A stretch of DNA of 64,000 nucleotides, from positions 1 to 64,000 of the forward strand of contig NIVC01003608.1 in NCBI GenBank assembly GCA_002269645.1, given 5' to 3'. Within the stretch, counting starts at the first letter, position 1; each line of letters begins with the position of its first letter. Shown piece after piece: positions 1 through 64,000 of the stretch. Source of the DNA: Macrostomum lignano. Lineage: Eukaryota. The notes below the pieces were generated by a model that worked only from the letters and a program-made list of their open reading frames with translations, did no database searches and was not told the DNA's origin. The translations under genes were made by a program, and so were the position numbers.

Positions 1-42
1 CTAAGAAGTCGATAAGATTTGAGTCCTGCTCCAGATTGCTAA

Positions 43-260
43 TTATGCGTCAATCTGCGAGTCGATCTGCTTAGGCCGCCGGCACACCGTGGGGCGGGCC
101 ACCGCCTCCCCGACTTGCCGATGCTGATGCGCCTGAAGCTGCTGCTGCTGCTGCGCGCGGCTGCTGCTGGCCGCAATGGGCGGAATGTACGGCGCGTCGT
201 TGCTGCTATCTAAATCGCTGAAGCCGTACAGGCAATTCTCGTCTTGCTGAGCTTGAGAAG

Positions 261-307
<47 letters not shown>

Positions 308-9765: not shown

Positions 9766-10571
9766 ACTAATTGGTACATAAAGCTGTTTCTAATTACATG
9801 TTCATTCATGTTTGTTCTGACATGCATTTATACCTGCTATTTTTTAATCATAATTTATAATCTCGGCTACAATAAAATGTATTACTATATACGAGTAGTA
9901 ATTATGAACTACAATTTACATGATATTTGATGTAAAATTATATTCCAGATCAATTCCATGTAGATCGAGGTCCCGACTGCGGTATTACTGCAGGACGGAC
10001 CTCTCCAGTATACTACCGCTGATCTTTACCTGAAACGTGATACTGTATTATAAGTGCTTGAATACTCCTTGCTTGATAAGAGTCAGGCGAGTCACATACG
10101 TAATCTCTTAAAGATTTCGGCACGGATTAGGCAGCAATTTTGAAGTAGCGATCCTCATTGATTAAGTAGGCAGTGCTGAAATTCGATATTTTTAGGTTTC
10201 CCAGTCAATTTTTTAACGTCATGCTCAGCTATTTTCAAGTGGTCTCAGGGTAACCCGCGGGAACCTCTGTAAAAAGTAATCGAATGAAAGAAATGGAATA
10301 AATTATTGTTCGTAGATTAGACGATATGCAAATTAAAGCAATTAAAAAATTACTGTAAAAAATGCGAAATTGTTAAAAGATTAAAATAAAAAAGCCTGGA
10401 ATAGAGGTTGTTGCACAGAAGCAATTACGCTACGTGTTCGATCATACAAAGTCTGCTGAATCAATTTTTTTTTCGACTCAGATCTACACCGGCTGTCGAA
10501 ATCTTTGTGAATGCATGCTCTCTCTTCTCTCTGCTTTATATCAGATCAATATCAGATATCAGATACAATAT

Positions 10572-19081: not shown

Positions 19082-25962
<6,881 letters not shown>

Positions 25963-26134
25963 GGCTGCGGCTGGGACTAATTTTTATTTAAGTTAAACTG
26001 AATTCAATTTTCAGCTTTGTATTTCTGCTTGCTAAACTTACTTTTTTAATATGGCAGGAGATTCTTCTCAATGACAGTATGGTCTCTGTCTGCTTTTAAA
26101 TTTGACCTTTCCTGAACCAACGGTTTTCCTTGGA

Positions 26135-40773: not shown

Positions 40774-43700
40774 TCAGAACACAGCGCAATCGAAGGGCGT
40801 CTTTCTGAGCAGCCGAGTCCAGACCAGCTCGCACGCCAGTAGGATCAGGCCAGCGACGTAGAATGCACCAGTGATGATCAGGGCGCCGCCCACGCCTTCC
40901 ATGTTGATGCTATCAGCCTCTGTTGACATGCCAACTGAGCAGGATTGGTCGGGCGCGTCATTCGTGAAGTATTTGGTGAATAGTCGCGAGTTCGCGCCGA
41001 TTATGTCCAGGTTGCGCAGGCTGTTAATTCGGGTGGGGGGGGGGGTAGGAAATCGATTTTAAAGTCTTTTCGATTCTGGAAACAATCTTGTCTTCAGCTT
41101 TTCTATATATCTCGAATCATCAACCGGGACACAATTTTTGAGGAAGTTTGTCGAAATCCTAATGGTAAAAAGGGATACGCTTCTATTTAGATGTAGATAG
41201 AGGAATTTTCCTGGTAATCTAGGCCTTCAAAAATTTTTTTGTGGTACCGCTCGGCCCGTCTCGATTTTCCCTATTATCGCTTATATAAAATCCCTAATCT
41301 CGCTTTTACTCTACTGATAGTAGCATAATGTGGCAAGCGCTCAAATTCTGTCTTTGAAATCATAAGTTAAAAAATGTAATTCAAAACCAATGTTGATTTT
41401 TAAAAAGTAGAGATAAAAAATTTCCTTTCTAACTAGTGAATGGGAGCGCTCTGTTTGAAACTAAATTTATGCCATTCATGCTCCCGGCATCTTAGCAACT
41501 TGAAAAGCTTGAACTTTCTTAATTTATTAACTAATCGCTTAACTCGTGCAGTAAACAGGACTGTTGGGACTTGCTAATTAACCTGGATAGAAACACCCAG
41601 AGTTACGTCTCAAGCCATGTGAAATGACACCTGATACAAAACAAGTTGTTAAAGTTAAAAAAAGCTGTGTTCTCGTCTGTACGTGGCTAATTGGGACCCA
41701 AATTCGTGTAGCTATCAAGTTTGTCTAACCTATTTAATTCTATCCAATAAACTTAATCCCATTCTCTGTGTACGATCCCCATTCGCGCGTATCTTCCCAT
41801 GCATGATGCGACCAACTTAATCCTCATTCACCCAATTCACTCCTGAGTCACCTAACTCATTCCCCATTCACACAACTCATTCCCCATTCACACAACTCAT
41901 TCCCCATTCACACAACTCAGTCTCCATTCACACAACTCAGTCTCCATTCACACAACTCAGTCTCCATTCACACAACTCATTCCCCATTCACACAACTCAT
42001 TCCGCATTCACAAAACTCAGTCTCCATTCACACAACTCATTCCCCATTCACCAAACTCACTCCCCATTCACCATACTCAGTCTCTATTCAACCAACTCAC
42101 TCCCCATTCACACAACTCACTCCTCAGTCACCTAACTCTTTCCCCATTCACACAACTCAGTCTCCATTCACACAACTCAGTCTCCATTCACACAACTCAT
42201 TCCCCATTCACACAACTCATTCCCCATTCACACAACTTTTTCCCCATTCACACAACTCAGTCTTCATTTACACAACTCAGTCTCCATTAACCAAAGTCAG
42301 TCTCTATTCACACAACTCACTCCCCATTCACCCAACTCAGTTCCCATTCACTAAAGTAAGTCTCTATTCACCCAACTCACTCCCCATTCACCAAACTCAC
42401 TCCCCATTCACCATACTCAGTCTCTATTCACCCAACTCACTCCCCATTCACACAACTCAGTTCCCAATCACCAAACTCACTCCCATTCACCCAACTCACT
42501 GCTCATCCAGCAGCTCAGAGAAGTAGGCATTCTTCGGGTAGGCGAAGCCGCAGGGTGCCACGTTGGCCCTCTCCTTGGCCAGATAGACTTTTTCGCAGTT
42601 GTTGTTGGCCACGTTTAGCAAAAAGGTGTAGTCACTGAGGCAGACCAGGCCCTTGTCGAATACCTTGTAAAAAGGTGTATATGGGGTAGCGGTTCGGGAT
42701 AAATGATTTATGATACTACCTGGTTAGAGGTCTCTAGGATACTAGGGAGAGAATTCCTCGGATTGTCGATATTTTTGGGGCCTCATGGGTGGCAGCTTTC
42801 AGTGCGCACAGCTTACCGCCTGAGCACAGTCTGGGATGGTGTCAGCCAGCAGCATCTGGTCCGTGATCTGCTTGTACACGCCCGACTGCGCACCCTTGAA
42901 TACATTGTGGATCGTGGTGCCTCGCGGCATTATTGGCGTCAGGCTGCCATCAGCCAGCATGTCCTCGAAGCTTTGAATTGGCAGGCTGGTGACTGAGACG
43001 GTCAAAGCTGAAGTCAGGTCGCCTGCGAGTGCGGATCAGGGAGCTCAATAGTAAACTGTTGCATCCGTGATTGTCATGAGTGCTGCAAAAATGTAATTAG
43101 GAATCTCAGCCCTGTGGGAGCTTCTCACTTCTCTGAAGCTGCCTTCTTCCCATCTCCCGCTCTGACTTTTCCAACTCTCGCCAATCACCCTCTCTCCCTC
43201 CTTCCCCATTTTCCTCTCCTGTTCAAACTTATTCTTTACTTCTCCCTCTCTCCCTCTCCTCTCCCCTTCTCTCCCCCTCTCTCTTCTCCTCTCTCTCCCT
43301 CTCTCTCCCTCTGTCCATTTTCCCTTTCTCCCTCTCCCCCTCTCCACCTCTCTTCATCTCCTCTCCCCCTCTCTCTCTCCTCTCCCCTCTCTCTCTCCTC
43401 TCCCCCTCTCTCCCTCTCTTCATCTCCTCTCCCCCTCTCTCTCTCCTCTCCCCCTCTCTCCCTCTCTTCATCTCCTCTCCCCCTCTCTCTCTCCTCTCCC
43501 CTCTCTCTCTCCTCTCCCCCTCTCTCCCTCTCTTCATCTCCTCCCCCCTCTCTCTCTCCTCTCCCCTCTCTCTCTCCTCTCCCCCTCTCTCCTTCTCTTC
43601 ATCTCCTCTCCCCCTCTTTCTCTCCTCTCCCCTTCTCTCCCTCTCTCTCTATCCTCTCCCCTTGATCTCTCCCTCTCTCCCTCGGTCCCTCTTTCACTTT

Positions 43701-46700
43701 CTCCCTTCCCCTCTCACCCTCTCTCCCTCTCCTCTCTCCCTCTCTCCCCCTCCCCTTCTCTCTCTTTCCCTCTCTCCTCTCACCCTCTCCCCTCTCTCCC
43801 TCTCTCCTAATTTCTTTTCTCTTAAAACCCATCAACTCTCTGTGCTTCATCTAACCCTTCTCCCGTCATCCCATTCTCGACTTCTGCTTCCCGACCCTCT
43901 CTCACAGTGATATTAATAATTTAGCTCCCAGTTGATGTATCCCAAAATTCACAAGCCAACTCGCAATGAATAGAGTCGTTTTGACTTGCAGCTGCCTGCC
44001 AATGCACTATGAGCACTGGGCTAAATGCTGTCCAGACAGGAAATTGGCAAAATACAATTTGGATAGACAATCAGAAGCCGGAGTAACTGCCTATTCGCTT
44101 AACCAAAATGGCGCCACACAGCTTAGCAATAATTAGAAAACATTTCCCGGTGACTTAATGTTTAGTCCGCGTAACTATCGTCACTCATTCTCCGGTGTGC
44201 TGTCAGCTCCCTTCACTCATTCTCCGGTGTGCTGTCAGCTCCCTTCACTCATTCTCCGGTGTGCTGTCAGCTCCCTTCACTCATTCTCAGGTGTGCTGTC
44301 AGCTCCCTTCAGTCACTCACCGGTGTTGCTGTCAGCTCCATTCACTCACTCACCGGTGTTGCTGTCAGCTCCATTCACTCACTCACCGGTGTTGCTGTCA
44401 GCTCCCCTCACTCACTCACCGGTGTACTGTCAGCTCCCTTCACTCACTCACCGGAGTGCTGTCAACTTCCTTTCATTCACTCACCGGTGTGCTGTCAACT
44501 TCCTTTCACTCACTCACCGGTGTGCTGTCAACTTCCTTTCACTCACCGGTGTGCTGTCAGCTCCCTTCACTCACCGGTGTTGCTGTCAGCTCCCTTCACA
44601 CTCACCGGTGTGCTGTCAGCTCCCTTCACTCACCGGTGTAAGCTCCATAGATGATCACGGTGAATAGCCACCAGAAGACCATCACTGCCCGAGGTGACAT
44701 TGCGTAGGGATAAAAGTCCTGGCCCTGCTGCAGGAAGCTGCCTATGCAGCTCCAGATGTACTCCTGCAGCCACACCTCGTCGGCGATGGCGAACTCCAGT
44801 TGCAGATTCCAAGCCGAGAACGGGCTGAAGTAGGCCAGGGCGAAGATTGTCAGCGAGGCTACCGCGAGAGCTGCCAGAACTGCCAGCCAGGTATCCGGGT
44901 GAAGCGGCGAGAAGATGTTCCACAGCTTGCTGGCGGGGGCCGGCCGCGGCAGCAGCAGGGTGAAGGCGTCCTCGAACAGGGTGTAGCCGAAGTCCACCAC
45001 GCGGGAGCGAGAGGCCGACTTGGTGAACGTAGTGGCGCCGAACACCACCGACTGCGGAGCGATGCGAACTCTATGCCAGACTCTATGCCAGACTCTATGC
45101 CAGACTCTATGCCAGACTCTATGCCAGACTCTATGCCAGACTCTATGCCAGACTCTATGCCAGACTCTATGCCAGACTCTATGCCAGACTCTATGCCAGA
45201 CTCTACGCTAGACTCTATGCCAGACTCTATGCCAGACTCTATGCCAGACTCTATGCCAGACTCTGTGGCAAACTCTGTGGCAGACTCTACTAGTATACCA
45301 GACTCTATGCCAGACTCTATGCCAGACTCTATGCCAGACTCTATGCCAGACTCTGTGCCAGACTCTGTGCCAGACTCTGTGCCAGACTCTATGCCAGACT
45401 CTATGCCAGACTCTATGCCAGACTCTATGCCAAACTGTATGCCAGACTCTACTAGTATATCAGACTCTATGCCAGACTATATTATACCATACTATGCCAG
45501 ACTCTATGCCAGGTCTTTATCAGATGAATGCCAGATCTATTCAGCATCTATCCAGCATCTATCCAGCATCTATCCAGCATCTATTCAGAATCTATCCAGC
45601 AATTAATCTCAATCTCAAACTCAACCTCAATCTCATTTTCAATCTAAATCTCAATCTTAATCTCAACCTCACCCTAAATTTCATTTTCAGTCTCAATCTT
45701 AATCTTAATCTCAATCTCAATCTCAATCTCAATCTCAATCTCAATCTTAATCTCAATCTCAATCTCAATCCCAATCTCAACCTCAATCTCAATCCCAATC
45801 TCAACCTCAATCTCTATCTCAATCTCAATCTCAATCTCAATCTCAATCTCAACCTTAATCTCAATCTCAATCTCAATCTCAATCTCAATCCCAATCTCAA
45901 CCTCAATCCCAATCTCAACCTCAATCTCTATCTCAATCTCAATCTCAATCTCAATCTCAATGTCAATCTCAATCTCAATCTCAATCTCAATCTCAATCTC
46001 AATCTCAATCTCAATCCCAATCTCAATCTCAATCTCAATCTCAATCTCAATCTCAATCTCAACCTCAATCTCAATCTCAATCTCAATCCCAACCTCAATC
46101 TCAATCTCAACCTCAATCTCAATCTCAATCTCAATCTCAACCTCAATCTCAATCTCAATCTCAATCTCAACCTCAATCTCAATCCCAATCTCAACCTCAA
46201 TCTCAATCTCAATCTCAATCTCAACCTCAATCTCAATCTCAACCTCAATCTCAATCTCAATCTCAATCTCAATCTCAATCTCAATCTCAATCTCAATCTC
46301 AACCTCAATCTCAATCTCAATCTCAATCTCAATCTCAATCTTAATCTCAATCTCAATCTCAATTTCAATCTCAATCTCAATTTCAATCTCAATCTCAATC
46401 TCAATCTCAACCTCAATCTCAATCTCAATCTCAATCACAATCCCAATCACAATCTCAATCTCAAACTCAATCTAAATCTCAATCTCAACCTCCACCTCAA
46501 TCTCAATGTTTGGCAGGTAAGCACACAGGAGCAACCATCACCTGGTTCTGAACCTCTCCAATGCAGCCTGAAGCGTAGGTCTGCCCGTCCTCGACGTTGC
46601 CCCAGAGGCCGTCATCTGACTGCTTCAATATGTAGCTGAAATGGTCATGGAATGTTTCTAATATCGTTGTGACACTGCTTTTCAATCTCTTCTTAGCCGG

Positions 46701-49700
46701 GCTCACTTGAACTCCATCTTCTCCTTCAAATATTCCAGAAGTTCCAGAACCATCCCAGTGATCTCTACGGTGTTGTTCGGGTACACCTTCGTGACCTTGA
46801 CGAATGGCTGAAACTGAAATTGTCGGGAAAATCAGGAGAGTTTCAGGAAAAGTATATAAGTATCAAGAAAATGTCAGGAACATCACATCAGTAGGGTGTC
46901 AAAAACATCATTAGGGTGTCAGAATCATCAGTAGGGTGTAAAAAACATCAGTAGGGTGTCAGAATCATCAGTAGGGTGTAAAAAACATCAGTAGGGTGTC
47001 AGAATCATCAGTAGGGTGTCAGGAACACCAGTAGGGTGTCAGAATCATCAGTAGGGTGTCAAAAACATCAGTAGGGTGTCAGAATCATCAGTAGGGTGTC
47101 AGGAACACCAGTAGGGTGTCAGAATCATCAGTAGGGTGTCAGGAACACCAGTAGGGTGTCAGGAACATCACATCAGTAGGGTGTCAGGAACATCACATCA
47201 GTAGGGTGTCAGAATCATCAGTAGGGTGTCAGAATCATCAGTAGGGTGTCAGGAACATCACATCAGTAGGGTGTCAGGAACATCACATCAGTAGGGTGTC
47301 AGAATCATCAGTAGGGTGTCAGGAACATCACATCAGTAGGGTGTCAGAATCATCAGTAGGGTGTCAAAAACATCAGCAGGGTGTCAGAATCATCAGTAGG
47401 GTGTCAGGAACACCAGTAGGGTGTCAGAATCATCAGTAGGGTGTCAGGAACATCACATCAGTAGGGTGTCAGAATCATCAGTAGGGTGTCAGGAACATCA
47501 CATCAGTAGGGTGTCAGAATCATCAGTAGGGTGTCAAAAACATCAGCAGGGTGTCAGAATCATCAGTAGGGTGTCAGGAACACCAGTAGGGTGTCAGAAT
47601 CATCAGTAGGGTGTCAGGAACATCACATCAGTAGGGTGTCAGAATCATCAGTAGGGTGTCAGGAACATCACATCAGTAGGGTGTCAGAATCATCAGTAGG
47701 GTGTCAAAAACATCAGCAGGGTGTCAGAATCATCAGTAGGGTGTCAGGAACACCAGTAGGGTGTCAGGAACATCACATCAGTAGGGTGTCAGGAACATCA
47801 CATCAGTAGGGTGTCAGGAACATCACATCAGTAGGGTGTCAGAATCATCAGTAGGGTGTCAGAATCATCAGTAGGGTGTCAGGAACATCACATCAGTAGG
47901 GTGTCAGAATCATCAGTAGGGTGTCAGGAACATCACATCAGTAGGGTGTCAGAATCATCAGTAGGGTGTCAGGAACATCACATCAGCAGGGTGTCAGAAT
48001 CATCAGTAGGGTGTCAGGAACACCAGTAGGGTGTCAGGAACATCACATCAGTAGGGTGTCAGGAACATCACATCAGTAGGGTGTCAGAATCATCAGTAGG
48101 GTGTCAGAATCATCAGTAGGGTGTCAGGAACATCACATCAGTAGGGTGTCAGAATCATCAGTAGGGTGTCAGGAACATCACATCAGTAGGGTGTCAGAAT
48201 CATCAGTAGGGTGTCAGGAACATCACATCAGCAGGGTGTCAGAATCATCAGTAGGGTGTCAGGAACACCAGTAGGGTGTCAGGAACATCACATCAGTAGG
48301 GTGTCAGGAACATCACATCAGTAGGGTGTCAGAATCATCAGTAGGGTGTCAGAATCATCAGTAGGGTGTCAGGAACATCACATCAGTAGGGTGTTAGAAT
48401 CATCAGTAGGGTGTCAGGAACATCACATCAGTAGGGTGTCAGAATCATCAGTAGGGTGTCAAAAACATCAGCAGGGTGTCAGAATCATCAGTAGGGTGTC
48501 AGGAACACCAGTAGGGTGTCAGAATCATCAGTAGGGTGTCAAGAACACCAATAGGGTGTCAGAATCATCAGTAGGGTGTCAAAAACATCAGTAGGGTGTC
48601 GAAATCATCAGTAGGGTGTCAGGAACATCAGATCAGTAGGGTGTCAGAATCATCAGTAGGATATCAAAAACACCAGTAGGGTGTCAGAATCATCAGTAGG
48701 GTGTCAAGAACACCAGTAGGGTGTCAGAATCATCAGTAGGGTGTCAGGAACACCAGTAGGGTGTCAGAATCATCAGTAGGGTGTCAGGAACACCAGTAGG
48801 GTGTCAGAATCATCAGTAGGATATCAAAAACACCAGTAGGGTGTCAGAATCATCAGTAGGGTGTCAGAAAAACCAGTAGGGTGTCAAAACATTCGGTGCT
48901 CGGTGAAAGACAGCGAGTCGAGCCTCACATCCATAGTACACAGCAGCAGGGTGTCATTCTTGAACCCGGTGAAGGTGTTGGGAAAAGCCACCGGCTTGCC
49001 CCTGAGCCGGTACAGGTCGGTCAGCCCGCCCGCCGCGTTTCGGCGATCAAATCTACCGGAGCGCACAAAGTGCAGCGGCTCGCTTCGCCTCAGGTTGTAG
49101 GTGGCGTACAAGTCGATGCCGTATTGGCTGTCGAAATGGCGCGTCGTAGCGTTGAAGGAGATGGGGCCGCGCACGGTAGGGTAGTTGCGAATCTAGGAGA
49201 AGATGAGTAGAGGAATTCATCCCCTGTCCCTGTTGAAACGGACTCTGGTGCATTAGCATCCTAGCTCTCTCTCTTACTGGCTGATCAGTCTTTTGTCGGG
49301 CACCACCAGCCCATTGTGTGCAGCCAGTTGAACCCCTCCCGATTCTCATAGCCTAGCCCACCACCCCATTCTGTGCAGCCAGTTGAACCTCTCCCGATTC
49401 TCATAGCCTAGCCCACCACCCCATTCTGTGCAGCCAGTTGAACCCCCCCCCCCGATTCTCATAGCCTAGCCTACCACCCCATTGTGTGCAGCCAGCTGAA
49501 CCTCTCCCGATTCTCATAGCCTAGCCCACCACCCCATTCTGTGCAGCCAGTTGAACCCCCCCCCCGATTCTCATAGCCTAGCCTACCACCCCATTGTGTG
49601 CAGCCAGTTGAACCCCTCCCGATTCTCATAGCCTAGCCTACCACCCCATTGTGTGCAGCCAGCTGAACCTCTCCCGATTCTCATAGCCTAGCCCATTATC

Positions 49701-52700
49701 CCATTCTGTGCAGCCAGTTAAACTCTTCCCGATTCTCATAGCCTAGCCCACCACCCCATTCTGTGCAGCCAGTTGAACCTCTCCCGATTCTCATAGCCTA
49801 GCCTACCACCCCATTCTGTGCAGCCAGTTGAACCTCTCCCGATTCTCATGGCCTAGCCCATTATCCCATTCTGTGCAGCCAGTTAAACTCTTCCCGATTC
49901 TCATAGCCTATCCCACCACCCCATTCTGTGCAGCCAGTTGAACCTCTCCCGATTCTCATGGCCTAGCCCATTATCCCATTCTGTGCAGCCAGTTAAACTC
50001 TTCCCGATTCTCATAGCCTATCCCACCACCCCATTCTGTGCAGCCAGTTGAACCTCTCCCGATTCTCATGGCCTAGCCCATTATCCCATTCTGTGCAGCC
50101 AGTTAAACTCTTCCCGATTCTCATAGCCTAGCCCACCACCCCATTCTGTGCAGCCAGTTGAACCCCTCCCGATTCTCATAGCCTAGCCTACCACCCCATT
50201 CTGTGCAGCCAGTTAAACTCTTCCCGATTCTCATAGCCTAGCCCACCACCCCATTCTGTGCAGCCAGTTGAACCCCTCCCGATTCTCATAGCCTAGCCTA
50301 CCACCCCATTCTGTGCAGCCAGTTAAACTCTTCCCGATTCTCATAGCCTATCCCACCACCCCATTCTGTGCAGCCAGTTGAACCTCTCTCGATTCTCATG
50401 GCCTAGCCCATTATCCCATTCTGTGCAGCCAGTTAAACTCTTCCCGATTCTCATAACCTATCCCACCACCCCATTCTGTGCAGCCAGTTGACCCCTCAAG
50501 ATTAGAAACATAAATTTCCTTTTTCATCGCCTAAAAATCTGGTCAAGCAGCTACACCCATAATTAAAGTTCAGCCAGTCCTAACCCCAGCCAGTTCACGG
50601 TACAGCAGCCTGCCCGTGGACCAGTGAGTGGGGCTGGGGGCAGCTGGGGAGCAGCTAGCGTTGCTCAGCAGGGCGGCGCCAGAAAAGTTGCCAGACAAAA
50701 TCAGCCGATCCAGGGCGAGGCCAACAGATTCGATCGCATCGACCGTTCGAACCTCCAGACTCTGCGGCGGGAGTGCAGTAACGCTAATGTACTATTATGA
50801 GTATAATTGTAAGATCCGATAAGCAACAAAGAAAATTTAGATTTGAAAAATCCTAGTAACAAAGTTTATTTAGTCTCTTAACGTCTGGTGACATGAAACT
50901 AGGCAAAAATACGAAGAACAACACGTCAATACTGTGGGTTCCTTCGGCTAAACTTGAGATTGGGATGAAGGAATAGAAGGAATGAAGAAATTTTCCTATC
51001 GTGGTGGGAACTGAGAGAGAGAGAGGACTGGGAAGGTTGTGCCCGCTGTCAAGTGCACCTATTGCTATTGGGTAATGGAGTTCTAAGTCCGTTGTCTGGA
51101 GAGGGAAAGTTGCTTATCTGTTTCTGTAAGGTTTGCTAGTGGCAATATAATAATACATGCAATTTTTGTAGCAAAAATATTTGGGTCACATCAAAATGTG
51201 AGCCCAAAATCAAATATTGATTTTTCTCCCTGACTCTCCCCTTCCTTCTCCCCAACCCTCTCGTCCCTTCTCCCCTGCCCTCTCCTCCCTTGTCCCCTGC
51301 CCTCTCCTCCCTTCTCCCCAACCCTCTCGTCCCTTCTCCCCAACCCTCTCCTCCCTTCTCCCCTGCCCTCTTCTCCCTTCTCCCCTGCCCTCTCCTCCCT
51401 TCTCCCCTGCCCTCTTCTCCCTTCTCCCCTGCCCTCTCCTCCCTTCTCCCCTGCCCTCTTCTCCCTTCTCCCCTGCCCTCCCTCCCTTCTCCCCTACCCA
51501 ATCTCCACCCTTCTCCCCTGCTCTCCCTCCCTTCTCTCCTGCCCTCTCCTCCCTTCTCCCCAACCCTTTCGTCTCTTCTCCCCTGCCCTCCCTCCCTTCT
51601 CCCCTATCCAATCTCCACCCTTCTCCCCTCCCTCCCTTCTCCCCTACCCAATCTCCACCCTTCTCCCCTGCCCTCCCTCCCTTCTCCCCTGCTCTCCCTC
51701 CCTTCTTCCCAATCCTCTCTATCCATCTCCCCTATAGATCTTATTCGTTTCCTCTCCAGATTTCAGGTCCCCAGTACTCCATTGTCAGTCCGGGCTCTCA
51801 ATATAGAGGCAGCAAAGCTTACAATTAAATTCCTCCCCTTCCCCCCCTCCCCCCAGTTTCATCAGCTCTCTTCCGCCACTCTCTGATATGTATATGCAAG
51901 TTCTTCAACAGGCCATGAACCGCAGCAGCCTGTTTGCACTCTCAGGAAAGCTAGCAGAAGCAGAAGAAATCAAAATGGCAGTTTTGCAACAAGATCCTCT
52001 GAGATTCTCTCTCTGCAGTCGCTACTCCATCGATTCCCACTGGAGGGAACAGTGCTACAGGTCTGAGGTTATCCCAGCTGAACGCTAGAAAACAGGAGGA
52101 CCCATAAAAAGAGCATTTTTGATTTTCTGTTTATGGCTTCCTAGATTTCTAGACCCCATCAAAGTTGGCCACCTCTATTATCGCGGATTAACCAACCGCA
52201 ATAAATGAGCACTTTCGTAGGGCGAAAATCCATTTGTTAGCACTATAGAGAATTTGTTTGGCAGCAAATCCCCTGGGGATAAACTCGCTGATCTGCCATT
52301 ATCCTTTTCGCACCTTGTCCTGAACGGTTTCTGTATGCCTGAGGAAACCCCCAAATCTGAGTGCTAAGGCGCATATTTTTGCAGTTCGTGACGTAGAGGA
52401 GGCTTGAGTGAGTCACGGCACTGATAAGTGAACTGTGTTGAGTGAGTCACGGCACTGATAGGTGAACTGTGTTGAGTGAGTCACGGCACTGACAGGTGAA
52501 CTGTGTTGAGTGAGTCACGGCACTGACAGGTGAACTGTGTTGAGTGAGTCACGGCACTGATAAGTGAACTGTGTTGAGTGAGTCACGGCACTGACAGGTG
52601 AACTGTGTTGAGTGAGTCACGGCACTGATAAGTGAACTGTATTGAGTGAGTCACGGCACTGAGAGGTGAACTGTGTTGAGTGAGTCACGGCACTGATAAG

Positions 52701-55700
52701 CGAACTGTATTGAATGAGTCACGGCACTGATAAGTGAACTGTATTGAGTGAGTCACGGCACTGACAGGTGAACACATTTGTATGCTACGAAAAGTCAATG
52801 TAAACTTTCTCATACGATTGTAAGCATAGTTGAATATATTGATATAATATTGTTTTGAATTTTTGTGTAAAAGCAAAGATGTAGAGGTGTACACCTGCCG
52901 GCCCAGTTCTGCAAAATCTATGAAGTTTACATTTCAAAATACCAACTGTCGGCCGCTCTATAGGCTAATCCCATGCTAATCTGGCACCCACACTGCATGC
53001 ACGGATACCAAAATTCTGTGAATAAATTCTGGACTTAAAAACAATTTACGACGCCGCCCGCTCAACTCCAGGGTAGTCAAAATCCAACCCATTGTTAAGC
53101 TTGGGCTGTTTGTCAATATAGATAGAAACTAACGACCAGGTTTAATTAGCTGTCTATGCTAATTAGCGCAGTTCAACTGCCGTTTGAAAGCAGGAATGAT
53201 TCTCGTTTCAGATACTATATCAGATACCCTGATCCTCATTCTACTTAAATCCTATGAACGGAAATTCCTAATCTACCTTGATGCCCAATCTACCTTGATC
53301 CCCAATCTATCTTGATCCCCAATCTATCTTGATCCCCAATCTACCTTGATCCCCAATCTATCTTGATCCCCAATCTATCTTGATCCCCAATCTACCTTGA
53401 TCCCCAATCTATCTTGATGCCCAATCTACCTTGATCCCCAATCTATCTTGATCCCCAATCTATCTTGATCCCCAATCTACCTTGATCCCCAATCTATCTT
53501 GATCCCCAATCTACCTTGATCCCCAATCTACCTTGATCCCCAATCTATCTTGATCCCCAATCTATCTTGATCCTCAATCTACCTTGATCCCCAATCTACC
53601 TTGATCCCCAATCTACCTTGATCCCCAATCTATCTTGATCCCCAATCTACCTTGATCCCCAATCTATCTTGATGCCCAATCTACCTTGATCCCCAATCTA
53701 TCTTGATCCCCAATCTATCTTGATCCCCAATCTACCTTGATCCCCAATCTATCTTGATCCCCAATCTACCTTGATCCCCAATCTACCTTGATCCCCAATC
53801 TATCTTGATCCCCAATCTATCTTGATCCTCAATCTACCTTGATCCCCAATCTACCTTGATCCCCAATCTACCTTGATCCCCAATCTACCTTGATCCCCAA
53901 TCTACCTTGATCTCCAATCTACCTTGATCCCCAATCTACCTTGATCCCCAATCTACCTTGATCCCCAATCTACATTGATCCCCAATCTACCTTGATCCCC
54001 AATCTACATTGATCCCCATAAACAGCAATCCCCAATCTACATTGATCCCATAAACAGCAATCCTCAATCTACCTTGATCCCATCGGTGAGCAGTCGGGGA
54101 AGACATCCAGCGCCCCAGCCGGGCAGTTCCCGTTGCCATCCAAGCCGAAGGTGCCGCCCCTCGCCAGCAGCAGGTTAACATTGGGTCTGGCCGCGGGAGA
54201 CGCCAGCAGGTCGGCGGGAGTCAGCCCGGTGTCCAGCACCAACCAGAAGTAGTTCTGCTGCAGCAGGCCAGGCGCAGTCGCCGCCGCAGTCGCCAAGACT
54301 TGTCGCAGTTCCGCCGGAGACAGCAGGGTGACAATGTGGCGAATCTTGGCTGACTGGGACAGCTGCGCCAGCTGCTGCTGCTGCCGCGGTCCACTCTGTA
54401 TGAGCAGACTGAAGCTGCTGATGCCGCCTCCGGTGAGTCTGAGCAGCAGCTGCTCAACTACACTGATGTCTGCCATGCGGATTTTCAGATATGGGATGCA
54501 GATTATCAGGTATGGGATATGGATTGTCAGATATGGAATGCGGATTACCATATATGGGATTTTCGGATATGGGATGCGGATTATCAAATTTAAAAAACCT
54601 GAGGAATTAAAAAAATCAATTTTTTTTCAATATACATGTAAGCATAAGAGTTCATATTCTAGAATTGAGAGCATATACGAGCTACGACTATACGCAAAGG
54701 CATCAAATTAACAAAATTATCTCACCCTGATTTCGATCGAACAGAACAGCGGCCTCGGATGCTCCGGCAGACAGCAGAGCAGCCAGGGTCGCTTCGATGA
54801 AGTCATCGCTCTGCTGACTGCCAACCAGCCCCAGGCCTGCGGAGCGGGCGGCGCGGTGGCGATGAGTTGAGTGACATGAGGAGTGACAGGTTGTGGGTGG
54901 GAGTGACAGGTTGTGGGTGGGAGTGACAGGTTGTGGGTGGGAGTGACAGGTTGTGGGTGGGAGTGACAGGTTGTGGGTGGGAGTGACAGGTTGTGGGTGG
55001 GAGTGACAGGTTGTGGGTGGGAGTGACAGGTTGTGGGTGGGAGTGACAGGTTGTGGGTGGGAGTGACAGGTTGTGGGTGGGAGTGACAGGTTGTGGGTGG
55101 GAGTGACAGGGTGTGGGTGGGAGTGACAGGTTGTGGGTGGGAGTGACAGGGTGTGGGTGGGAGTGACAGGTTGTGGGTGGGAGTGACAGGGTGTGGGTGG
55201 GAGTGACAGGTTGTGGGTGGGAGTGACAGGTTGTGGGTGGGAGTGACAGGGTGTGGGTGGGAGTGACAGGTTGTGGGTGGGAGTGACAGGTTGTGGGTGG
55301 GAGTGACAGGGTGTGGGTGGGAGTGACAGGTTGTAAGTGGGAGTGACAGGTTGTGGGTGGGAGTGACAGGTTGTGGGTGGGAGTGACAGGTTGTGGGTGG
55401 GAGTGACAGGTTGTGGGTGGGAGTGACAGGGTGTGGCTGGGAGAGTGACAGGACAGGGTGTGGCTGGGAGAGTGACAGGACAGGGTGTGGCTGGGAGAGT
55501 GACAGGACAGGGTGTGGCTGGGAGAGTGACAGGACGGTTGTGGCTGGGAGAGTGACAGGACAGGGTGTGGCTGGGAGAGTGACAGGACGGTTGTGGCTGG
55601 GGACGCAGGAATGTTTGAAAAGTTGTTTTTCAAAAGTTGGCTTCAAGGCGCACCGGTCGCCACGTCCTGACGGCAGAGGCCGCTGGGCACCCCGATGAAG

Positions 55701-57706
55701 GGCACCGACATAGAGTTGGCCGCCCTGTTGAGTTCGTTGAGCAAGCAGCAGCTGCCAACTCCTACGATCGCTGATGTTGGCGTTGAATTTGAGCACACTG
55801 CGGGAGTGGGAGGTGGGACTTTGAGTTTCGGGTGAGATTTTTTAGACTGTGAGAGTCTGGGGTGAGATGTTTTAGACTGAGAGAGTCTGGGGTAAGATTG
55901 TTTAGACTTTGAGAGTCTGGGGTGAGATTCTTTAGACTGAGAGAGTCTGGGTTAAGATTGTTTAGACTGTGAGAGTCTGGGGTGAGATTGTTTAGACTGT
56001 GAGAGTCTGGGGTGAGATTCTTTAGACTGAGAGAGTCTGGGGTGAGATTGTTTAGACTATGAGAGTCTGAGGTGAGATTGTTTAGACTTGAGAGTCTGGG
56101 TGAGATTCTTTAGACTGTGAGAGTTTGGGGTAAGATTGGTTAGACTGTGAGAGTCTGGGGTGAGTTTATTTAGACTGTGAGAGCCTGAGATGAGATGCTT
56201 AGACTGTGAGAGCCTGAGGTGAGATTCTTTAGACTGTGAGAGTTTGGGGTGAGATTCTTTTGACTGTGAGAGTTTGGGGTAGGATTGGTTAGACTGTGAG
56301 AGTCTGAAGTTAGATTCTTTAGACTGTGAGAGTCTGGGTGAGATGCTTTAGACTGTGAGAGTCTGGGGTGAGATTTTTTAGACTGTGAGAGTCTGGGGTG
56401 AGATTGTTTAGACTGTGAGAGCCTGAGATGAGATTCTTTACACTGTGAGAGTCTGGGGTGAGATGCTTTAGACTTTGAGAGTCTGGAGTGAGATTCTTTT
56501 GACTCTGAGAGTTTAGGGTAAGATTGGTTAGACTGTGAGAGTTTAAGGTAAGATTGGTTAGACTGTGAGAGTCTGAGGTGAGATTCTTTAGACTGTGAGA
56601 GTCTGAGGTGAGATTCTTTAGACTTGAGAGTCTGGGTGAGCTTTTTTAGACTGTGAGAGTCTGGGGTAAGATTGTTTAGACTGTGAGAGCCTGAGATGAG
56701 ATTCTTTAGACTGTGAGAGTCTGGGGTGAGATTGTTTAGACTGTGAGAGTTTGGGGTGAGATTGTTTAGACTGTGAGAGTCTGAGGTAAGATTGTTTAGA
56801 CTGTGAGAGCCTGAGATAAGATTCTTTAGACTGTGAGAGTCTGGGGTGAGATTGTTTAGACTGTGAGATCCTGAGGTGAGATTCTTTAGACTGTGAGAGT
56901 CTGGAGTGAGATTCTTTTGACTGTGAGAGTTTGGGGTAGGATTGGTTAGACTGTGAGAGTCTGAAGTTAGATTCTTTAGACTGTGAGAGTCTGAGGTGAG
57001 ATGCTTTAGACTGTGAGAGTCTGGGGTGAGATTGTTTAGACTGTGAGAGTCTGAGGTAAGATTGTTTAGACTGTGAGAGCCTGAGATAAGATTCTTTAGA
57101 CTGTGAGAGTCTGGGGTGAGATTCTTTAGACTGTGAGAGTCTGGAGTGAGATTGTTTAGACTGTGAGAGCCTGAGGTGAGATTCTTTAGACTGTGAGAGT
57201 CTGGAGTGAGATTCTTTTGACTGTGAGAGTTTGGGGTAAGATTGGTTAGACTGTGAGAGTTTGAGGTTAGATTCTTTAGACTGTGAGAGTCTGAGGTGAG
57301 ATTGTTTAGACTTGAGAGTCTGGGGTGAGATGCTTTAGACTGTGAGAGTCTGGGGTAAGATTGTTTAGACTGTGAGAATCTGGGGTGAGATGCTTTAGAC
57401 TGTGAGAGTCTGGGGTGAGATGCTTTAGACTGTGAGAGTCTGGGAGAGTGAGAACAGCTGTGTCCACTCACCAGCGCCGCTCATTACCAGCGTGTCGTTG
57501 CCCTCCACCAAGCTGTAGGTCATTCGGTGCCCATTCAGCAGGCGCCAATTGTCGTTAACTCGTCGCTTCACCGACCTGTCAATCAGACTTTCGCTCACCA
57601 GAGAATTCTCCACGACAACTGACAGGTGAAAGTCTATGGCCGAACTTGGCCTGATGCTGAGCGCAAGCAGCAGGGCTGGAAGAAGAAGTCTTATAAGCAG
57701 TGCCAT
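40774..57706 (-). CDS. Divergent ionotropic glutamate receptor-family subunit (ATD + S1 + M1-M3 + S2 + M4), 12 exons, ~850 aa
   Basis: Exons (minus): 57706-57472, 55797-55654, 54836-54726, 54469-54073, 50761-50585, 49192-48929, 46813-46707, 46635-46542, 45051-44634, 43022-42817, 42663-42500, 41020-40774. Signal peptide; ATD motifs (AIVGVGSC, VRGPISF); S1 (QPFV...GMVLELL, DDGLWG, SRSRVVDF); pore SFLQQG; M3 WWLFTVIIYGAYTGDLTSALT; S2; M4 MEGVGGALII...LACE. All junctions are in phase except exon 4/5. Confidence 0.88.
41825..42500. repeat. 20-bp minisatellite (CACACAACTCA(T/C/G)TC(C/T)CCATT), iGluR intron 11
   Basis: Direct inspection; begins at the donor site. Confidence 0.93.
43180..43810. repeat. 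Polypyrimidine (CT-rich) tract, iGluR intron 9
   Basis: Direct inspection. Confidence 0.9.
44180..44640. repeat. 28-33-bp minisatellite containing the exon-9 splice donor (CACTCACCGGTGTGCTGTCAGCTCCCTT)
   Basis: About 15 units; the most exon-proximal unit overlaps the real ACACCG|GTGAGT donor on the - strand. Confidence 0.93.
45068..45520. repeat. 12-bp minisatellite (GACTCTATGCCA), iGluR intron 8
   Basis: Direct inspection. Confidence 0.95.
45603..46506. repeat. (TCTCAA)n hexanucleotide microsatellite, iGluR intron 8
   Basis: Direct inspection; source of the poly-LN/IE/RL/SI ORFs. Confidence 0.97.
46885..48892. repeat. 20/25-bp minisatellite (CATCAGTAGGGTGTCAGAAT / ...GGAACATCA), 2 kb, iGluR intron 6
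   Basis: Direct inspection; repeated blocks of monomer variants. Confidence 0.95.
49300..50490. repeat. ~55-bp satellite (CTGTGCAGCCAGTTGAACCTCTCCCGATTCTCATAGCCTAGCCCACCACCCCATT), iGluR intron 5
   Basis: Direct inspection; ~21 units. Confidence 0.95.
51225..51720. repeat. Polypyrimidine degenerate repeat (CCCTTCTCCCCTGCCCTCT...), iGluR intron 4
   Basis: Direct inspection. Confidence 0.9.
52406..52775. repeat. 34-bp minisatellite (GAGTGAGTCACGGCACTGA(T/C)A(A/G)GTGAACTGTGTT), ~11 units
   Basis: Direct inspection; each unit has TGAGTCA. Confidence 0.95.
53270..54082. repeat. 17-bp minisatellite (CCCCAATCTA(C/T)CTTGAT) overlapping the exon-4 donor
   Basis: About 45 units; the minus-strand unit ATCAAGGTAGATTGGGG matches the exon 4 end GATCAAG|GTAGAT. 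Confidence 0.93.
54870..55605. repeat. G-rich 20-bp (GAGTGACAGGTTGTGGGTGG) and 27-bp minisatellites, iGluR intron 2
   Basis: Direct inspection. Confidence 0.95.
55830..57450. repeat. ~30-bp minisatellite (TTAGACTGTGAGAGTCTGGGGTGAGATT(G/C)T), iGluR intron 1
   Basis: Direct inspection; source of the spurious 433-aa ORF. Confidence 0.95.
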
Positions 57707-63340: not shown

Positions 63341-63732
63341 TCAATTAGTCGGCGACGCAGCGGCGGCAGCCGCCGCGCACCACGCGTTGGGATTATAATC
63401 CTCATTGTAGAAGGAGAAGTTGGCAAACTCCTCCTGTTGAATGGCCTGCACCGTGTCCGCATCGATCGGGGTCAGGCGGGCCTCTTCGCTGGTGAAGTCC
63501 CGGTCGAAGTTGCTGGTGTCCGTGCGGCCGCGCACCTTCGCTTGAACGGCGGCTCCACGCCGAGCGCCTCCAGGGCCTCCCAGTCGATACGGCCGTGGAA
63601 GAACTGGTGGGTCATCACCGCTTTTTCGCGGCCCTGCGCCGGGTCGCAGCCGAGTCGGCGGGCCGGCTTCTTGGCTAGGAAGCCTTTGAGTATGGAGACG
63701 GCCTCACGGGACAGCCACACTGGGTACAGCAC
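63341..63732 (-). CDS. PRKCE: Terminal exon of a novel-class protein kinase C (PKC epsilon-like): end of kinase domain and AGC C-tail; rest of gene lies outside the window
   Basis: Acceptor CCTCGCCCAG| at 63732, then [29 protein letters not shown]...HQFF...IDWEALE...PPFK. After a 1-bp deletion at ~63540 it continues [P][26 protein letters not shown]...[11 protein letters not shown], with turn motif LTP and hydrophobic motif FxxFSF (Ser, so not an atypical PKC). Confidence 0.85.
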
Positions 63733-63759
63733 CTGGGCGAGGAGGGGTGCATGGGTGGT

Positions 63760-64000
63760 TGGATAGATAGATAGAGGGATAGATAGATAGATGGATGGAT
63801 AGATAGATAGATAGATAGATAAAGGGATAGATAGATAGATGGATGGATAGATGGATAGATAGATAGATATATAGATAGATGGATGGATAGATGGATAGAT
63901 AGATAGATAGATATATAGATAGATGGATAGATAGATGGATGGATAGATGGATAGATAGATATATAGATAGATGGATGGATAGATAGATAGATAGATATAT
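63760..64000. repeat. (GATA/GGAT)n microsatellite in the PKC last intron
   Basis: Direct inspection. Confidence 0.95.

What the first reader, a model, noticed from the sequence alone, without database searches (positions are those of the whole stretch)
42500..45051. iGluR with a rewritten gate (AYTGDLTSA for SYTANLAAF) and a non-glutamate ligand signature
Seen: M3 reads IYGAYTGDLTSALT, with changes at A4>G, N5>D, A7>T, A8>S (the lurcher position) and F9>A. The pore keeps Q (FLQQG). S1 keeps the alpha-carboxyl-binding Arg (SRSRVVDF). By eye, S2 has Ile at the GluA2 T655-equivalent (PRGTTIHNVF) and Asp at the E705-equivalent (CLSDY). Established: SYTANLAAF is the most conserved iGluR motif; A7/A8 substitutions cause constitutive or altered gating; a hydrophobic residue at 655 plus Asp at 705 is typical of glycine/D-serine-binding subunits. 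Inference: an ATD-retaining but IR-like divergent receptor, possibly a chemosensory or leak channel gated by a small amino acid. The added Asp in the outer vestibule might alter Ca2+ permeation.
Basis: partly seen in the sequence, partly recalled or inferred. Interest (0 to 1): 0.7.

Follow-up and report, generated by a model that had tools for sequence, protein, structure and literature searches.

The report
Flatworm glutamate-receptor gene with altered gate
The window holds an intact 12-exon gene for a glutamate-receptor-type ion channel from a flatworm-only subfamily, in which the normally near-invariant gate motif SYTANLAAF reads YTGDLT and the ligand pocket looks built for an amino acid other than glutamate; it is a real and moderately interesting variant whose function is untested.

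Summary
On the minus strand, 42500-45051 is exons 9-11 of a 12-exon, 853-aa iGluR gene (40774-57706). All introns are GT-AG and there are no in-frame stops. The protein has a signal peptide, ATD, LBD, pore loop, M1/M3/M4 and a short tail. M3 reads IYGAYTG|DLTSALTV across a phase-1 intron, so 3 of 9 SYTANLAAF positions are kept.

The gate is a family trait. At least ten Macrostomum lignano paralogue clusters carry YTGD[LM]T with an invariant FLQQGQDFYP pore loop (clade bootstrap 100/100). Among the 149 nearest public representatives the Gly-Asp pair occurs only in this clade. Parasitic flatworms, and then mollusc, nemertean and annelid "delta-1-like" receptors, are the next relatives.

Most profile and multiple alignments are ungapped and put T684-T685-I686 on GluA2 G653-S654-T655 (GluD1 S-A-V). 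They put S727-D728 on L704-E705. Arg524 is kept. This is a delta/GluN1-like signature, not a glutamate one, but such predictions are known to fail.

Positions 1, 4 and 8 of the motif are the three published M3 hinge points, and all three differ here (A, G, S). "Leak channel", "chemosensory" and "Asp alters Ca2+ permeation" remain untested. The last is unlikely by helix geometry.

Verdict: a new variant of a known kind, of moderate interest.

The parts
40774..57706 (-). Whole iGluR gene: 12 coding exons, 853 codons plus stop, about 17 kb
   Evidence: Exons joined at GT-AG sites give one open frame. The product is collinear with M. lignano P0167 from residue 37 to the C-terminus. tblastn with 8 homologues finds no second iGluR in the window.
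57472..57706 (-). Exon 1: ATG, signal peptide (MALLIRLLLPALLLALS...), start of the amino-terminal domain
   Evidence: Sequence read. The phase-1 donor GCTG|GTGAGT matches the phase-1 acceptor of exon 2. Residues 37-78 align with P0167.
48929..55797 (-). Exons 2-6 (55797-55654, 54836-54726, 54469-54073, 50759-50585, 49192-48929): amino-terminal domain
   Evidence: Pfam ANF_receptor E = 6.6e-8, residues 49-354. Splice sites.
46542..46813 (-). Exons 7 and 8 (46813-46707, 46635-46542): first part of S1, including W489 at the GluA2 Y450 position
   Evidence: Pfam Lig_chan-Glu_bd 7e-13.
44634..45051 (-). Exon 9: end of S1 (T519, R524), M1, pore loop FLQQGQDF (Q617 at the Q/R site, D621 at +4), and M3 up to A646-Y-T plus the first base of G649
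   Evidence: 59-63% identical to M. lignano homologues over this exon.
43023..44633 (-). Intron 9 (phase 1, inside the Gly649 codon), filled by two repeat arrays. The first starts at the donor and repeats it.
   Evidence: TRF: 44181-44633 with a period of about 33 (14 copies) and 43241-43807 TC-rich. Sequence. Same intron position in M. lignano P0001.
42817..43022 (-). Exon 10: rest of the gate (G649 D650 L T652 S653 A654 L T V), the M3-S2 linker, and the start of S2 with the helix-F motif R-G-T684-T685-I686
   Evidence: Alignments.
42500..42663 (-). Exon 11: S2 with C725, S727-D728 (the GluA2 L704-E705 position) and C740 (the conserved LBD disulfide Cys)
   Evidence: D728 pairs with E/D705 (GluK2).
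40774..41020 (-). Exon 12: end of S2, M4, and the short tail ending P-F-D-C-A-V-F, then the TGA stop
   Evidence: The tail motif P-x-[DQ]-C-x-x-[FY] is shared with M. lignano paralogues.

Best explanation
This is a functional gene for a pore-forming subunit of a tetrameric, ligand-gated cation channel of the iGluR superfamily. It belongs to a flatworm subfamily seen so far only in Macrostomum-type sequences. That subfamily sits inside a spiralian, delta-like (AKDF-type) group.

Shown:
- An intact 12-exon gene with every iGluR domain.
- A pore loop (Q at the Q/R site, Asp at +4) that is invariant across paralogues only 40-50% identical overall.
- A clade-wide M3 motif, YTGD[LM]T.
- An LBD that keeps the residues holding the alpha-carboxyl (R524, T519) and alpha-amino (D728) groups of an amino acid. 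It replaces the helix-F G-S-T that holds glutamate's gamma-carboxylate with T-T-I.

Inferred:
- The agonist is an amino acid other than glutamate. Glycine, D-serine, alanine and GABA are the candidates, as for delta, GluN1/3 and some epsilon receptors.
- The channel passes cations including Ca2+ and is blocked by polyamines.
- Gating still works by LBD closure pulling on M3, but with altered energetics. The three M3 positions where AMPA-receptor helices hinge on opening (S615, A618, A622, which are motif positions 1, 4 and 8) are Ala, Gly and Ser here. Gly at the 'A hinge' is fixed in the whole clade and should make the helix easier to kink, like the glycine hinge of K+ channels.
- Thr652 puts a hydroxyl ring at the A621 gate level.
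- The paralogue expansion suggests heteromeric assemblies.
For: - Gene integrity and model.
- Domains.
- PDB relatives: kainate, delta and AMPA chains fill the 60 best matches, 174-188 bits with the family profile.
- Clade trait: M. lignano M3 motifs TYTGDLTAH, AFTGDLTAH, AYTGDLTAH, SYTGDLTAH, AYTGDLTAK and VYTGDMTAH.
- The GD pair occurs only in this clade among 149 representatives. Elsewhere Gly at position 4 occurs in 23/148 and Asp in 20/148.
- NJ bootstrap for the clade is 100/100.
- Constraint: the window protein keeps 61/69 (88%) of the columns invariant in the eight other clade members, against 89-100% for those members in leave-one-out. Its departures are mostly conservative.
- The intron position is shared with M. 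lignano.
- LBD equivalences.
- Published rules (PMC13648236): all glutamate-selective receptors tested have Gly at the first alphaF position. SSV, SAV and SSI go with glycine/D-serine, and SSL (starfish Delta) goes with GABA.
- Hinges at S615, A618 and A622: PMC12074995.
- Q/R site plus an acidic residue at +4 relate to polyamine block: PMC12226733.
Against: - No expression or functional data exist for this gene or any clade member that I could find.
- The alphaF register is not unanimous. phmmer and one hhalign run give G683-T684-T685 = G-S-T, a glutamate-like site.
- The only structure model was too poor to settle this (mean pLDDT 53, S2 below 50).
- Ligand prediction from these motifs is unreliable. 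A cnidarian receptor with alphaF-GSL is still glutamate-selective, and close paralogues differ in agonist.
- No characterised receptor has Thr at the first alphaF position.
- The effects of A4G and N5D on gating are inferred, not measured.
- The window protein differs from its clade at the lurcher position (A>S) and position 9 (H/K>A), so it may not behave like the others.
Confidence: 0.6

Rival explanations
1. It is an ordinary glutamate-gated channel. The helix-F motif is really G683-T684-T685 (= G-S-T), with a one-residue insertion after it, and the M3 changes are tolerated drift.
For: phmmer pairwise alignment to GluK2/GluK5 and hhalign of the family alone against kainate/AMPA give this register. 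R524 and D728 are kept. Asp at the 705 position also occurs in glutamate-selective receptors.
Against: This register needs two compensating indels within about 15 residues, although the PIxSxxDL-to-FF and FF-to-V[FY] spacings equal those of AMPA, kainate and delta receptors. Adding the mollusc and nemertean relatives, or comparing with delta receptors, gives the ungapped register in 5 of 5 hhalign runs. Most M. lignano paralogues have G-T-N, not G-T-T. YTGDLT is conserved, not drifting.
Confidence: 0.15
2. It is a constitutively open (leak) or ligand-inhibited channel. Gly at the A hinge plus Ser at the lurcher position destabilise the closed gate.
For: A8T (lurcher) makes GluD2 constitutively active (PMC7335009). 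All three hinge positions are altered. A natural precedent exists: wild-type Trichoplax AKDF 19383 is constitutively active and inhibited by glycine (PMC13648236).
Against: A>S is a small change. Non-Ala residues at position 8 occur in 19 of 148 related receptors, including S in seven. The rest of the clade keeps Ala8. A complete and conserved LBD argues that ligand control matters. There is no measurement.
Confidence: 0.12
3. It is an IR-like chemosensory receptor for an environmental cue rather than a synaptic receptor, possibly for a ligand that is not an amino acid.
For: It lacks one of the three canonical glutamate-contacting residues (the Thr). That is the criterion used for insect IRs (Benton/Croset, from memory; Croset 2010 is cited). 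It is a lineage-specific gene expansion, which is typical of chemoreceptors.
Against: It keeps the ATD, R524 and D728, so an alpha-amino-acid ligand is likely. The family profile scores IR25a (P0100, 185.7 bits) about the same as GluK1 (182.0) and GluD1 (183.5). No expression data exist.
Confidence: 0.08
4. It is a decaying or non-functional copy (pseudogene, or a non-conducting scaffold).
For: It scores lowest of nine clade members in the conservation test (88%). It has two F>A changes at clade-invariant sites and private changes at gate positions 8 and 9. Its introns are swollen with minisatellites.
Against: There are 853 codons without a stop or frameshift and 11 canonical GT-AG introns. 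The pore loop is identical to the clade consensus. Most departures are conservative, and 88% is close to the 89% and 91% of two M. lignano members.
Confidence: 0.05

Closest known systems
Uncharacterised Macrostomum lignano iGluR paralogues (e.g. UniProt A0A1I8HJW1 = P0167, PAA-series BOX15_Mlig017883g2 = P0001)
   Same: Same architecture. Same pore loop FLQQGQDFYP. Same YTGD[LM]T gate. Same extra Cys pair before the S-D motif. Same C-terminal P-x-D-C-x-x-[FY]. Same phase-1 intron in the hinge Gly codon.
   Different: Only 42-50% identical. They have A-H (or A-K) at gate positions 8-9 where the window has S-A. Their alphaF is T-N-[LIH] or T-S-L rather than T-T-I. Their introns are about 100 nt rather than kilobases of minisatellite.
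Spiralian 'delta-1-like' / 'glutamate receptor-like' proteins (Haliotis XP_067672970.1, Pecten XP_033737179.1, Mytilus XP_052069391.1, Lineus XP_064635760.1, Tubulanus XP_074655756.1) and neodermatan flatworm relatives (Spirometra, Fasciola, Paragonimus)
   Same: They are the next-nearest relatives. They share the alphaF pattern G-[ST]-N-L and [TS]-D at the L704-E705 position. Several have Asp at gate position 5 (TYTADLVAF, TYTADLAAY, FWEADITAY).
   Different: Molluscs keep the canonical STYTANLAAF. None has Gly-Asp. Pore loops differ. They probably correspond to one of the 'uncharacterised bilaterian AKDF' groups of PMC12226733, but I could not establish which.
Delta receptors (GluD1/GluD2)
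   Same: Among the best PDB matches (GluD1 187 bits). Helix-F S-A-V aligns with T-T-I and W-D aligns with S-D. The ligands are small amino acids or GABA rather than glutamate. The lurcher position is the classical site of gate destabilisation.
   Different: Delta receptors keep SYTANLAAF. The NJ tree does not place the clade inside Delta. Residue 704 is small (Ser), not Trp, so the pocket should be larger.
Glycine/D-serine-binding NMDA subunits (GluN1, GluN3) and the glycine-selective epsilon receptors (e.g. Trichoplax GluE1alphaA, alphaF-SSI)
   Same: Hydroxyl, hydroxyl, beta-branched aliphatic at helix F, with Arg and Asp kept.
   Different: NMDA chains are not among the 60 best PDB matches. 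There is no Trp at 704. The first alphaF residue is Thr, which no characterised receptor has.
Insect/protostome ionotropic receptors (IR25a, IR8a and divergent IRs)
   Same: Protostome iGluR relatives with degenerate ligand triads and often degenerate M3 motifs. IR25a and IR8a keep an ATD.
   Different: IR25a keeps ATFTANLAAF (named). There is no preferential similarity to IR25a. Arg and Asp are retained here.
Glycine gating hinge of K+ channels (works-like comparison only; from memory)
   Same: A Gly in the pore-lining inner helix at the point where the helix bends on opening.
   Different: A different family with inverted topology. In AMPA receptors the hinge residue is Ala618. No test was made here.

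Membership tests
iGluR superfamily | S1/S2 clamshell ligand-binding domain interrupted by the channel (Pfam Lig_chan-Glu_bd + Lig_chan) | tested here: met
   Lig_chan 4.6e-25 and Lig_chan-Glu_bd 7e-13, both above Pfam cut-offs.
iGluR superfamily | Amino-terminal domain (ANF_receptor fold) as in AMPA, kainate, delta and NMDA subunits | tested here: met
   ANF_receptor E = 6.6e-8, 32.4 bits against a cut-off of 25.4, residues 49-354.
iGluR superfamily | M1, re-entrant pore loop, M3, M4, with a Q/R/N-site residue | tested here: met
   Aligned end to end with GluK2, GluD1 and GluA2 chains. Q617 at the Q/R site and D621 at +4.
iGluR superfamily | SYTANLAAF gating motif in M3 | tested here: not met
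   AYTGDLTSA keeps 3 of 9 positions. A4 and N5, two of the three best-conserved positions (PMC6307864), are changed. That study excluded sequences with fewer than 4 of 9.
iGluR superfamily | Conserved LBD disulfide (GluA2 C718-C773) | tested here: met
   C740 (NNNCEK) and the Cys in DQSCSVG align with the two Cys of kainate and AMPA receptors. By alignment only.
Glutamate-selective iGluRs (AMPA, kainate, GluN2 type) | Arg485, alphaF G-S-T (Gly first, Thr hydroxyl for the gamma-carboxylate), Glu/Asp705 | tested here: not met
   Arg and Asp are present. AlphaF is T-T-I in 8 of 10 alignment tests and G-T-T in 2. Not met on the majority register, with some residual doubt.
Delta class (GluD) | Phylogenetic placement with GluD1/2; alphaF S-A-V, W-D; canonical SYTANLAAF | tested here: inconclusive
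   The LBD motifs are similar in kind. PDB scores equal kainate. The NJ tree does not nest the clade in Delta. The tree is a simple distance tree without Epsilon, NMDA or Lambda references.
NMDA glycine-binding subunits (GluN1/GluN3) | Membership of the NMDA subfamily; S-S-V/S-S-A plus W-D | tested here: not met
   No NMDA chain is among the 60 best PDB matches of the family profile. Residue 704 is Ser, not Trp.
Ionotropic receptors (IRs) | Loss of one or more of the R/T/D-E ligand triad | tested here: met
   Thr is replaced by Ile686 on the majority register. Arg and Asp are kept.
Ionotropic receptors (IRs) | Descent from the protostome IR clade (IR25a-related) and, for most, loss of the ATD | tested here: inconclusive
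   The ATD is present. The profile scores IR25a (185.7 bits) like GluK1 and GluD1. IR25a sequences were dropped from the tree by the coverage filter, so placement was not tested.
Macrostomum 'YTGDLT' iGluR clade (defined here) | Y-T-G-D-[LM]-T in M3, pore FLQQGQDFYP, C-terminal P-x-[DQ]-C-x-x-[FY], phase-1 intron in the hinge Gly codon | tested here: met
   (bootstrap 100/100).

The most novel reading that the evidence does not exclude
The conserved Gly-Asp pair at the M3 hinge defines a different gating regime for a whole flatworm receptor family. One possibility is channels with high spontaneous activity that amino acids modulate or inhibit. Another is proton-sensitive gating, through the Asp5...His9/Lys9 pair that lies one helical turn apart in the M. 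lignano paralogues and is lost (Ala9) in this gene. On this reading the gene would be a natural lurcher-like variant of that family, with Ser at position 8.
Probability: 0.12. Interest if true: 0.6.

Novelty: new variant of a known kind. Interest (0 to 1): 0.4.

Why it matters
SYTANLAAF is the reference point for almost all work on iGluR gating and for many human disease mutations. Recent cryo-EM places the opening hinges at its positions 1, 4 and 8.

A natural, conserved and apparently functional family has Gly at the A hinge, Asp next to it and Thr at the gate. This member also has Ser at the lurcher hinge. It therefore offers a ready-made test of what those positions contribute, in a model flatworm genus that can be manipulated.

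It also fills a sampling gap. The two large iGluR phylogenies I could read contain no flatworms, and one of them discarded sequences with fewer than four conserved motif residues, so this clade would have been excluded.

If the ligand is not glutamate, it adds another independent switch of agonist within the AKDF-type receptors.

None of this bears on a long-standing open question, and divergent iGluRs are common in invertebrates, so the interest is moderate.

Tried and rejected
1. Profile and multiple alignments, and the bridge through mollusc and delta-like relatives, overturned it.

2. An alternative register for E705 (YTFLLN on YAFLLE/YAFLWD) appeared in phmmer against GluK5, HMMER against GluD1 and MAFFT. 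I rejected it for three reasons. It needs a 6-8 residue deletion before the disulfide Cys. The Asp is invariant in the clade while the alternative residue varies. Mollusc relatives (YMTDRSQLEY...C) align without gaps to both sides.

I did not try to get round this, and for the same reason did not hand it to structure prediction. I used single-exon translations and M. lignano homologues instead.

4. AlphaFold2 of P0001 with the only alignment allowed (20 rows, nearly all M. lignano) gave mean pLDDT 53 and pTM 0.38, with S2 below 50. I did not use it, did not run fold search and did not spend the second job.

5. The word-indexed homologue searches reach only M. lignano. The exhaustive profile search was needed to see other phyla.

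6. I searched with the neighbouring PKC-like exon to identify the source species. The best hit was 56% identical, to a shrimp. The species remains unknown; it is probably a flatworm related to Macrostomum, but not the sequenced M. lignano. The reasons are that the best protein match is about 46-50% identical, no identical protein was found, and the introns are far longer.

7. I looked for a second, canonical M3/S2 exon (mutually exclusive splicing). tblastn with the canonical paralogue P0007 hits only the same exon.

8. dN/dS was not attempted because the sequences are too diverged (46% protein identity).

9. Nakagawa 2024 on the Ca2+ 'site G' is not held in the library.

10. The NJ tree is crude (Kimura distances, 404 profile columns). 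Only the 100/100 clade is relied on. Flatworm monophyly has 58-61% support.

Full report
**What is in the sequence**

The window is eukaryotic DNA, with spliced genes and introns full of micro- and minisatellites. The finding lies on the minus strand. Open stretches with iGluR-like translations were joined at canonical splice sites. The six 3' exons (46813-46707, 46635-46542, 45051-44634, 43022-42817, 42663-42500, 41020-40774) give a 411-aa S1-M1-P-M3-S2-M4 core in one frame. Six more exons upstream (57706-57472, 55797-55654, 54836-54726, 54469-54073, 50759-50585, 49192-48929) add a signal peptide and an amino-terminal domain.

The product is 853 aa. All eleven introns are GT-AG. The model aligns collinearly with a full-length Macrostomum lignano protein (P0167, 816 aa) from residue 37 to the last residue, at 42% identity over 830 columns.

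Pfam finds Lig_chan (4.6e-25), Lig_chan-Glu_bd (7e-13) and ANF_receptor (6.6e-8). tblastn with eight homologues finds no second iGluR gene in the window.

**The observation**

M3 is split by intron 9. Exon 9 ends TAC ACC G|gtgagt and exon 10 starts cag|GC GAC CTG ACT TCA GCT.

The M. lignano gene for P0001 (NIVC01000845.1) has an intron at the same place, in the same phase and in the same Gly codon. It is 96 nt long there against 1611 nt here. This supports the junction independently.

The pore loop is FLQQGQDF, with Q617 at the Q/R site and D621 four residues later. S1 has SRSRVVDF, where R524 aligns with the ligand-binding Arg in every alignment.

**Relatives**

The word-indexed search found only M. 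lignano proteins, the best 50% identical. An exhaustive profile search of 1.84 billion representatives found 11,573 relatives at E < 1e-3.

The top hits are M. lignano paralogues. Next come proteins named by their sources as follows:
- Spirometra, Fasciola and Paragonimus hypothetical proteins (parasitic flatworms);
- Haliotis, Pecten, Nucella and Mytilus "delta-1-like / glutamate receptor-like";
- Lineus, Tubulanus (nemerteans) and Owenia (annelid).

Anchors in the same list are human GluK1 (P0111), vertebrate GluD1 (P0107), insect IR25a (P0100, P0119) and amphioxus "delta-1-like" proteins.

In a distance tree on 404 profile columns, the window protein groups with the M. lignano sequences that carry YTGD[LM]T (bootstrap 100/100). 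Its place inside that group is unresolved (20-51). Joining this group to the neodermatan sequences gets 58-61.

The 60 best PDB matches of the family profile are all kainate, delta or AMPA receptor chains or unclassed "Glutamate receptor" entries (174-188 bits), with none labelled NMDA. The family is therefore AKDF-like. Published trees mention several uncharacterised protostome and bilaterian AKDF groups (PMC12226733). I could not tell which one this is. Neither large phylogeny I read sampled flatworms.

**The gate is a clade trait**

The M. lignano paralogues read TYTGDLTAH, AYTGDLTAH, AFTGDLTAH, AFNGDLTAH, SYTGDLTAH, AYTGDLTAK and VYTGDMTAH. A close paralogue, P0007, keeps AYTANLTAF.

Among 149 representatives with a complete motif:
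- Gly-Asp at positions 4-5 occurs only in this clade (10 sequences);
- Gly4 alone occurs in 23/148, mostly a spiralian "YSGNLIAF" group;
- Asp5 alone occurs in 20/148, including nemertean, trematode and other M. lignano proteins;
- a non-Ala residue at position 8 occurs in 19/148.

The pore loop GSF[LM]QQGQDFYP is identical across paralogues that are only 40-50% identical overall. That argues for conserved ion conduction.

The window protein keeps 61 of 69 columns that are invariant in the eight other clade members (88%). Those members score 89-100% when each is left out in turn. Six of its eight departures are conservative, and one of them is the lurcher Ala>Ser. So A4G, N5D and A7T are inherited and constrained. 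S653 and A654 are private to this gene.

Ramos-Vicente et al. note that positions 2, 4 and 5 of SYTANLAAF are the best conserved. They excluded sequences with fewer than four conserved positions. This protein has three.

**The ligand site**

By eye, and in a phmmer alignment, R-G-T-T-I looks like D-G-S-T-M of GluK2 with Gly on Gly. That register needs a gap pair.

The spacing from PIxSxxDL to the helix-F "FF", and from there to the next V[FY], is the same as in AMPA, kainate and delta receptors. The following alignments are all ungapped and give T684-T685-I686 = GluA2 G653-S654-T655 = GluD1 S-A-V:
- HMMER family profile against GluK2 and GluD1;
- the family HMM against 150 representatives;
- MAFFT with an AMPA receptor;
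- five hhalign comparisons: family against delta-like, family plus spiralian relatives against kainate/AMPA and against delta-like, and spiralian relatives alone against each.

The mollusc relatives (G-S-N-L-Y-S-L-F) match delta-like receptors (D-S-S-L-Y-T-F-F; GluD1 D-S-A-V-Y-E-Y-F) closely in that register. Only the shallow family profile against kainate/AMPA gave the gapped version.

For E705, some alignments slid YTFLLN onto YAFLLE. However, D728 is invariant in the clade. It lies 12 residues before the disulfide Cys, exactly as in GluK2. It also pairs with the Asp of mollusc and delta receptors in ungapped alignments.

The site is therefore: W489 (Y450), T517 (P478), T519 (T480), R524 (R485), T684-T685-I686 (G-S-T) and S727-D728 (L-E).

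A 2026 mutagenesis survey reports several relevant points (PMC13648236):
- every glutamate-selective receptor examined has Gly at the first alphaF position, and glycine- or other-ligand receptors do not;
- SSV, SAV and SSI accompany glycine/D-serine selectivity, and SSL accompanies a GABA-preferring starfish Delta;
- Asp at the E705 position also occurs in glutamate-selective receptors;
- the rules fail in some receptors.

**How it probably works**

Shown: an intact gene with all modules and clade-level constraint on the pore and gate.

Inferred from family knowledge:
- a tetrameric cation channel opened by closure of the LBD on an amino acid;
- Q617 and D621 predict Ca2+ permeability and polyamine block;
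- cryo-EM of GluA2 places the M3 hinges used in opening at S615, A618 and A622 (PMC12074995). These are motif positions 1, 4 and 8, which are Ala, Gly and Ser here;
- a fixed Gly at the A hinge should lower the cost of kinking M3. Thr652 replaces the gate-level Ala621.

By helix periodicity, position 5 lies about 200 degrees from the pore-lining positions 3 and 7. Asp650 therefore probably faces neighbouring helices rather than the permeation path. In the M. lignano paralogues it sits one turn from His or Lys at position 9, a possible pair that this gene lacks. These last points are inference only.

A constitutively active, ligand-inhibited AKDF receptor exists in Trichoplax, so a leak-type behaviour is possible but unsupported here.

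**Comparison and novelty**

The protein meets every architectural criterion of an iGluR except the gating motif and the glutamate-type pocket.
- It resembles delta and GluN1/3 receptors in its pocket chemistry but is not shown to belong to either.
- It meets the "lost triad residue" criterion of IRs but keeps the ATD, and it shows no special similarity to IR25a.
- Clade members sit in public databases as unnamed predictions.
- I found no paper describing them.

I rate it a new variant of a known kind, with moderate interest.

**Limits**

- There are no expression or functional data.
- The only structure model was unusable (pLDDT 53), because the spliced protein and the wider homologue set could not be submitted.
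- The tree is a simple NJ tree without epsilon, NMDA or lambda references.
- The source species is unidentified.

Noticed in passing
window 41813-42498, 44181-44633, 53270-54081 (minus-strand introns 11, 9, 4); also 45068-45512, 45605-46507, 46885-48892, 49303-50497, 54880-55601, 55823-57444: Nearly every long intron of the gene is made of minisatellite arrays. In introns 4, 9 and 11 the array starts exactly at the 5' splice site. Its unit repeats the donor, in introns 4 and 9 together with the last exon bases (GGGATCAAG|GTAGATTG; ACACCG|GTGAGTGAAGGGAGCTGACAGC; intron 11: GTGAGTTGGGTGAATGGGA). Each of these introns therefore carries many tandem copies of its own donor site. The homologous M. 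lignano intron 9 is 96 nt and has no array.
   Followed up: partly
window 63344-63999, minus strand: The last exons of a protein-kinase-C-like gene. Pfam Pkinase_C E = 6.6e-14. The best database match is 56% identical, to a crustacean novel-type PKC. It lies about 6 kb upstream of the iGluR start codon on the same strand, with a poly-(SIYL) repeat just before it.
   Followed up: partly
window 209-3501, minus strand: A long open frame (1000 aa) rich in Gln, Ala and His, with SVEQSAE-type repeats. It has weak C2H2 zinc-finger matches (E about 1e-3, below the Pfam cut-off). It is probably a zinc-finger or low-complexity nuclear protein gene.
   Followed up: partly
window 8846-9766, minus strand: Open frames that by eye resemble fragments of a retroelement reverse transcriptase. 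There is no Pfam hit at E < 0.01 for the two pieces tested, so this is unconfirmed.
   Followed up: partly
window 19909-20595 and 23984-25959, plus strand: Coiled-coil-like open frames interrupted by a proline/serine-rich minisatellite, with weak ATG16/CCDC coiled-coil matches. This may be another gene on the opposite strand.
   Followed up: no
window 42640-42642 (C725) and the Cys in TIPDCAQA of exon 10 (about 42826-42846); tail at 40777-40797: Two clade-specific features. One is an extra Cys pair flanking the strand that carries S727-D728; it is present in all M. lignano clade members and absent in mollusc relatives. The other is a conserved C-terminal motif P-x-[DQ]-C-x-x-[FY] right after M4. 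Both are unexplained. They may be an extra LBD disulfide and a trafficking or PDZ-type signal.
   Followed up: no
window 1-2000, 12001-14000, 22001-26000: Strong local composition swings (GC up to 0.64, GC skew up to 0.82 at 12-14 kb). These are presumably further simple-repeat blocks.
   Followed up: no
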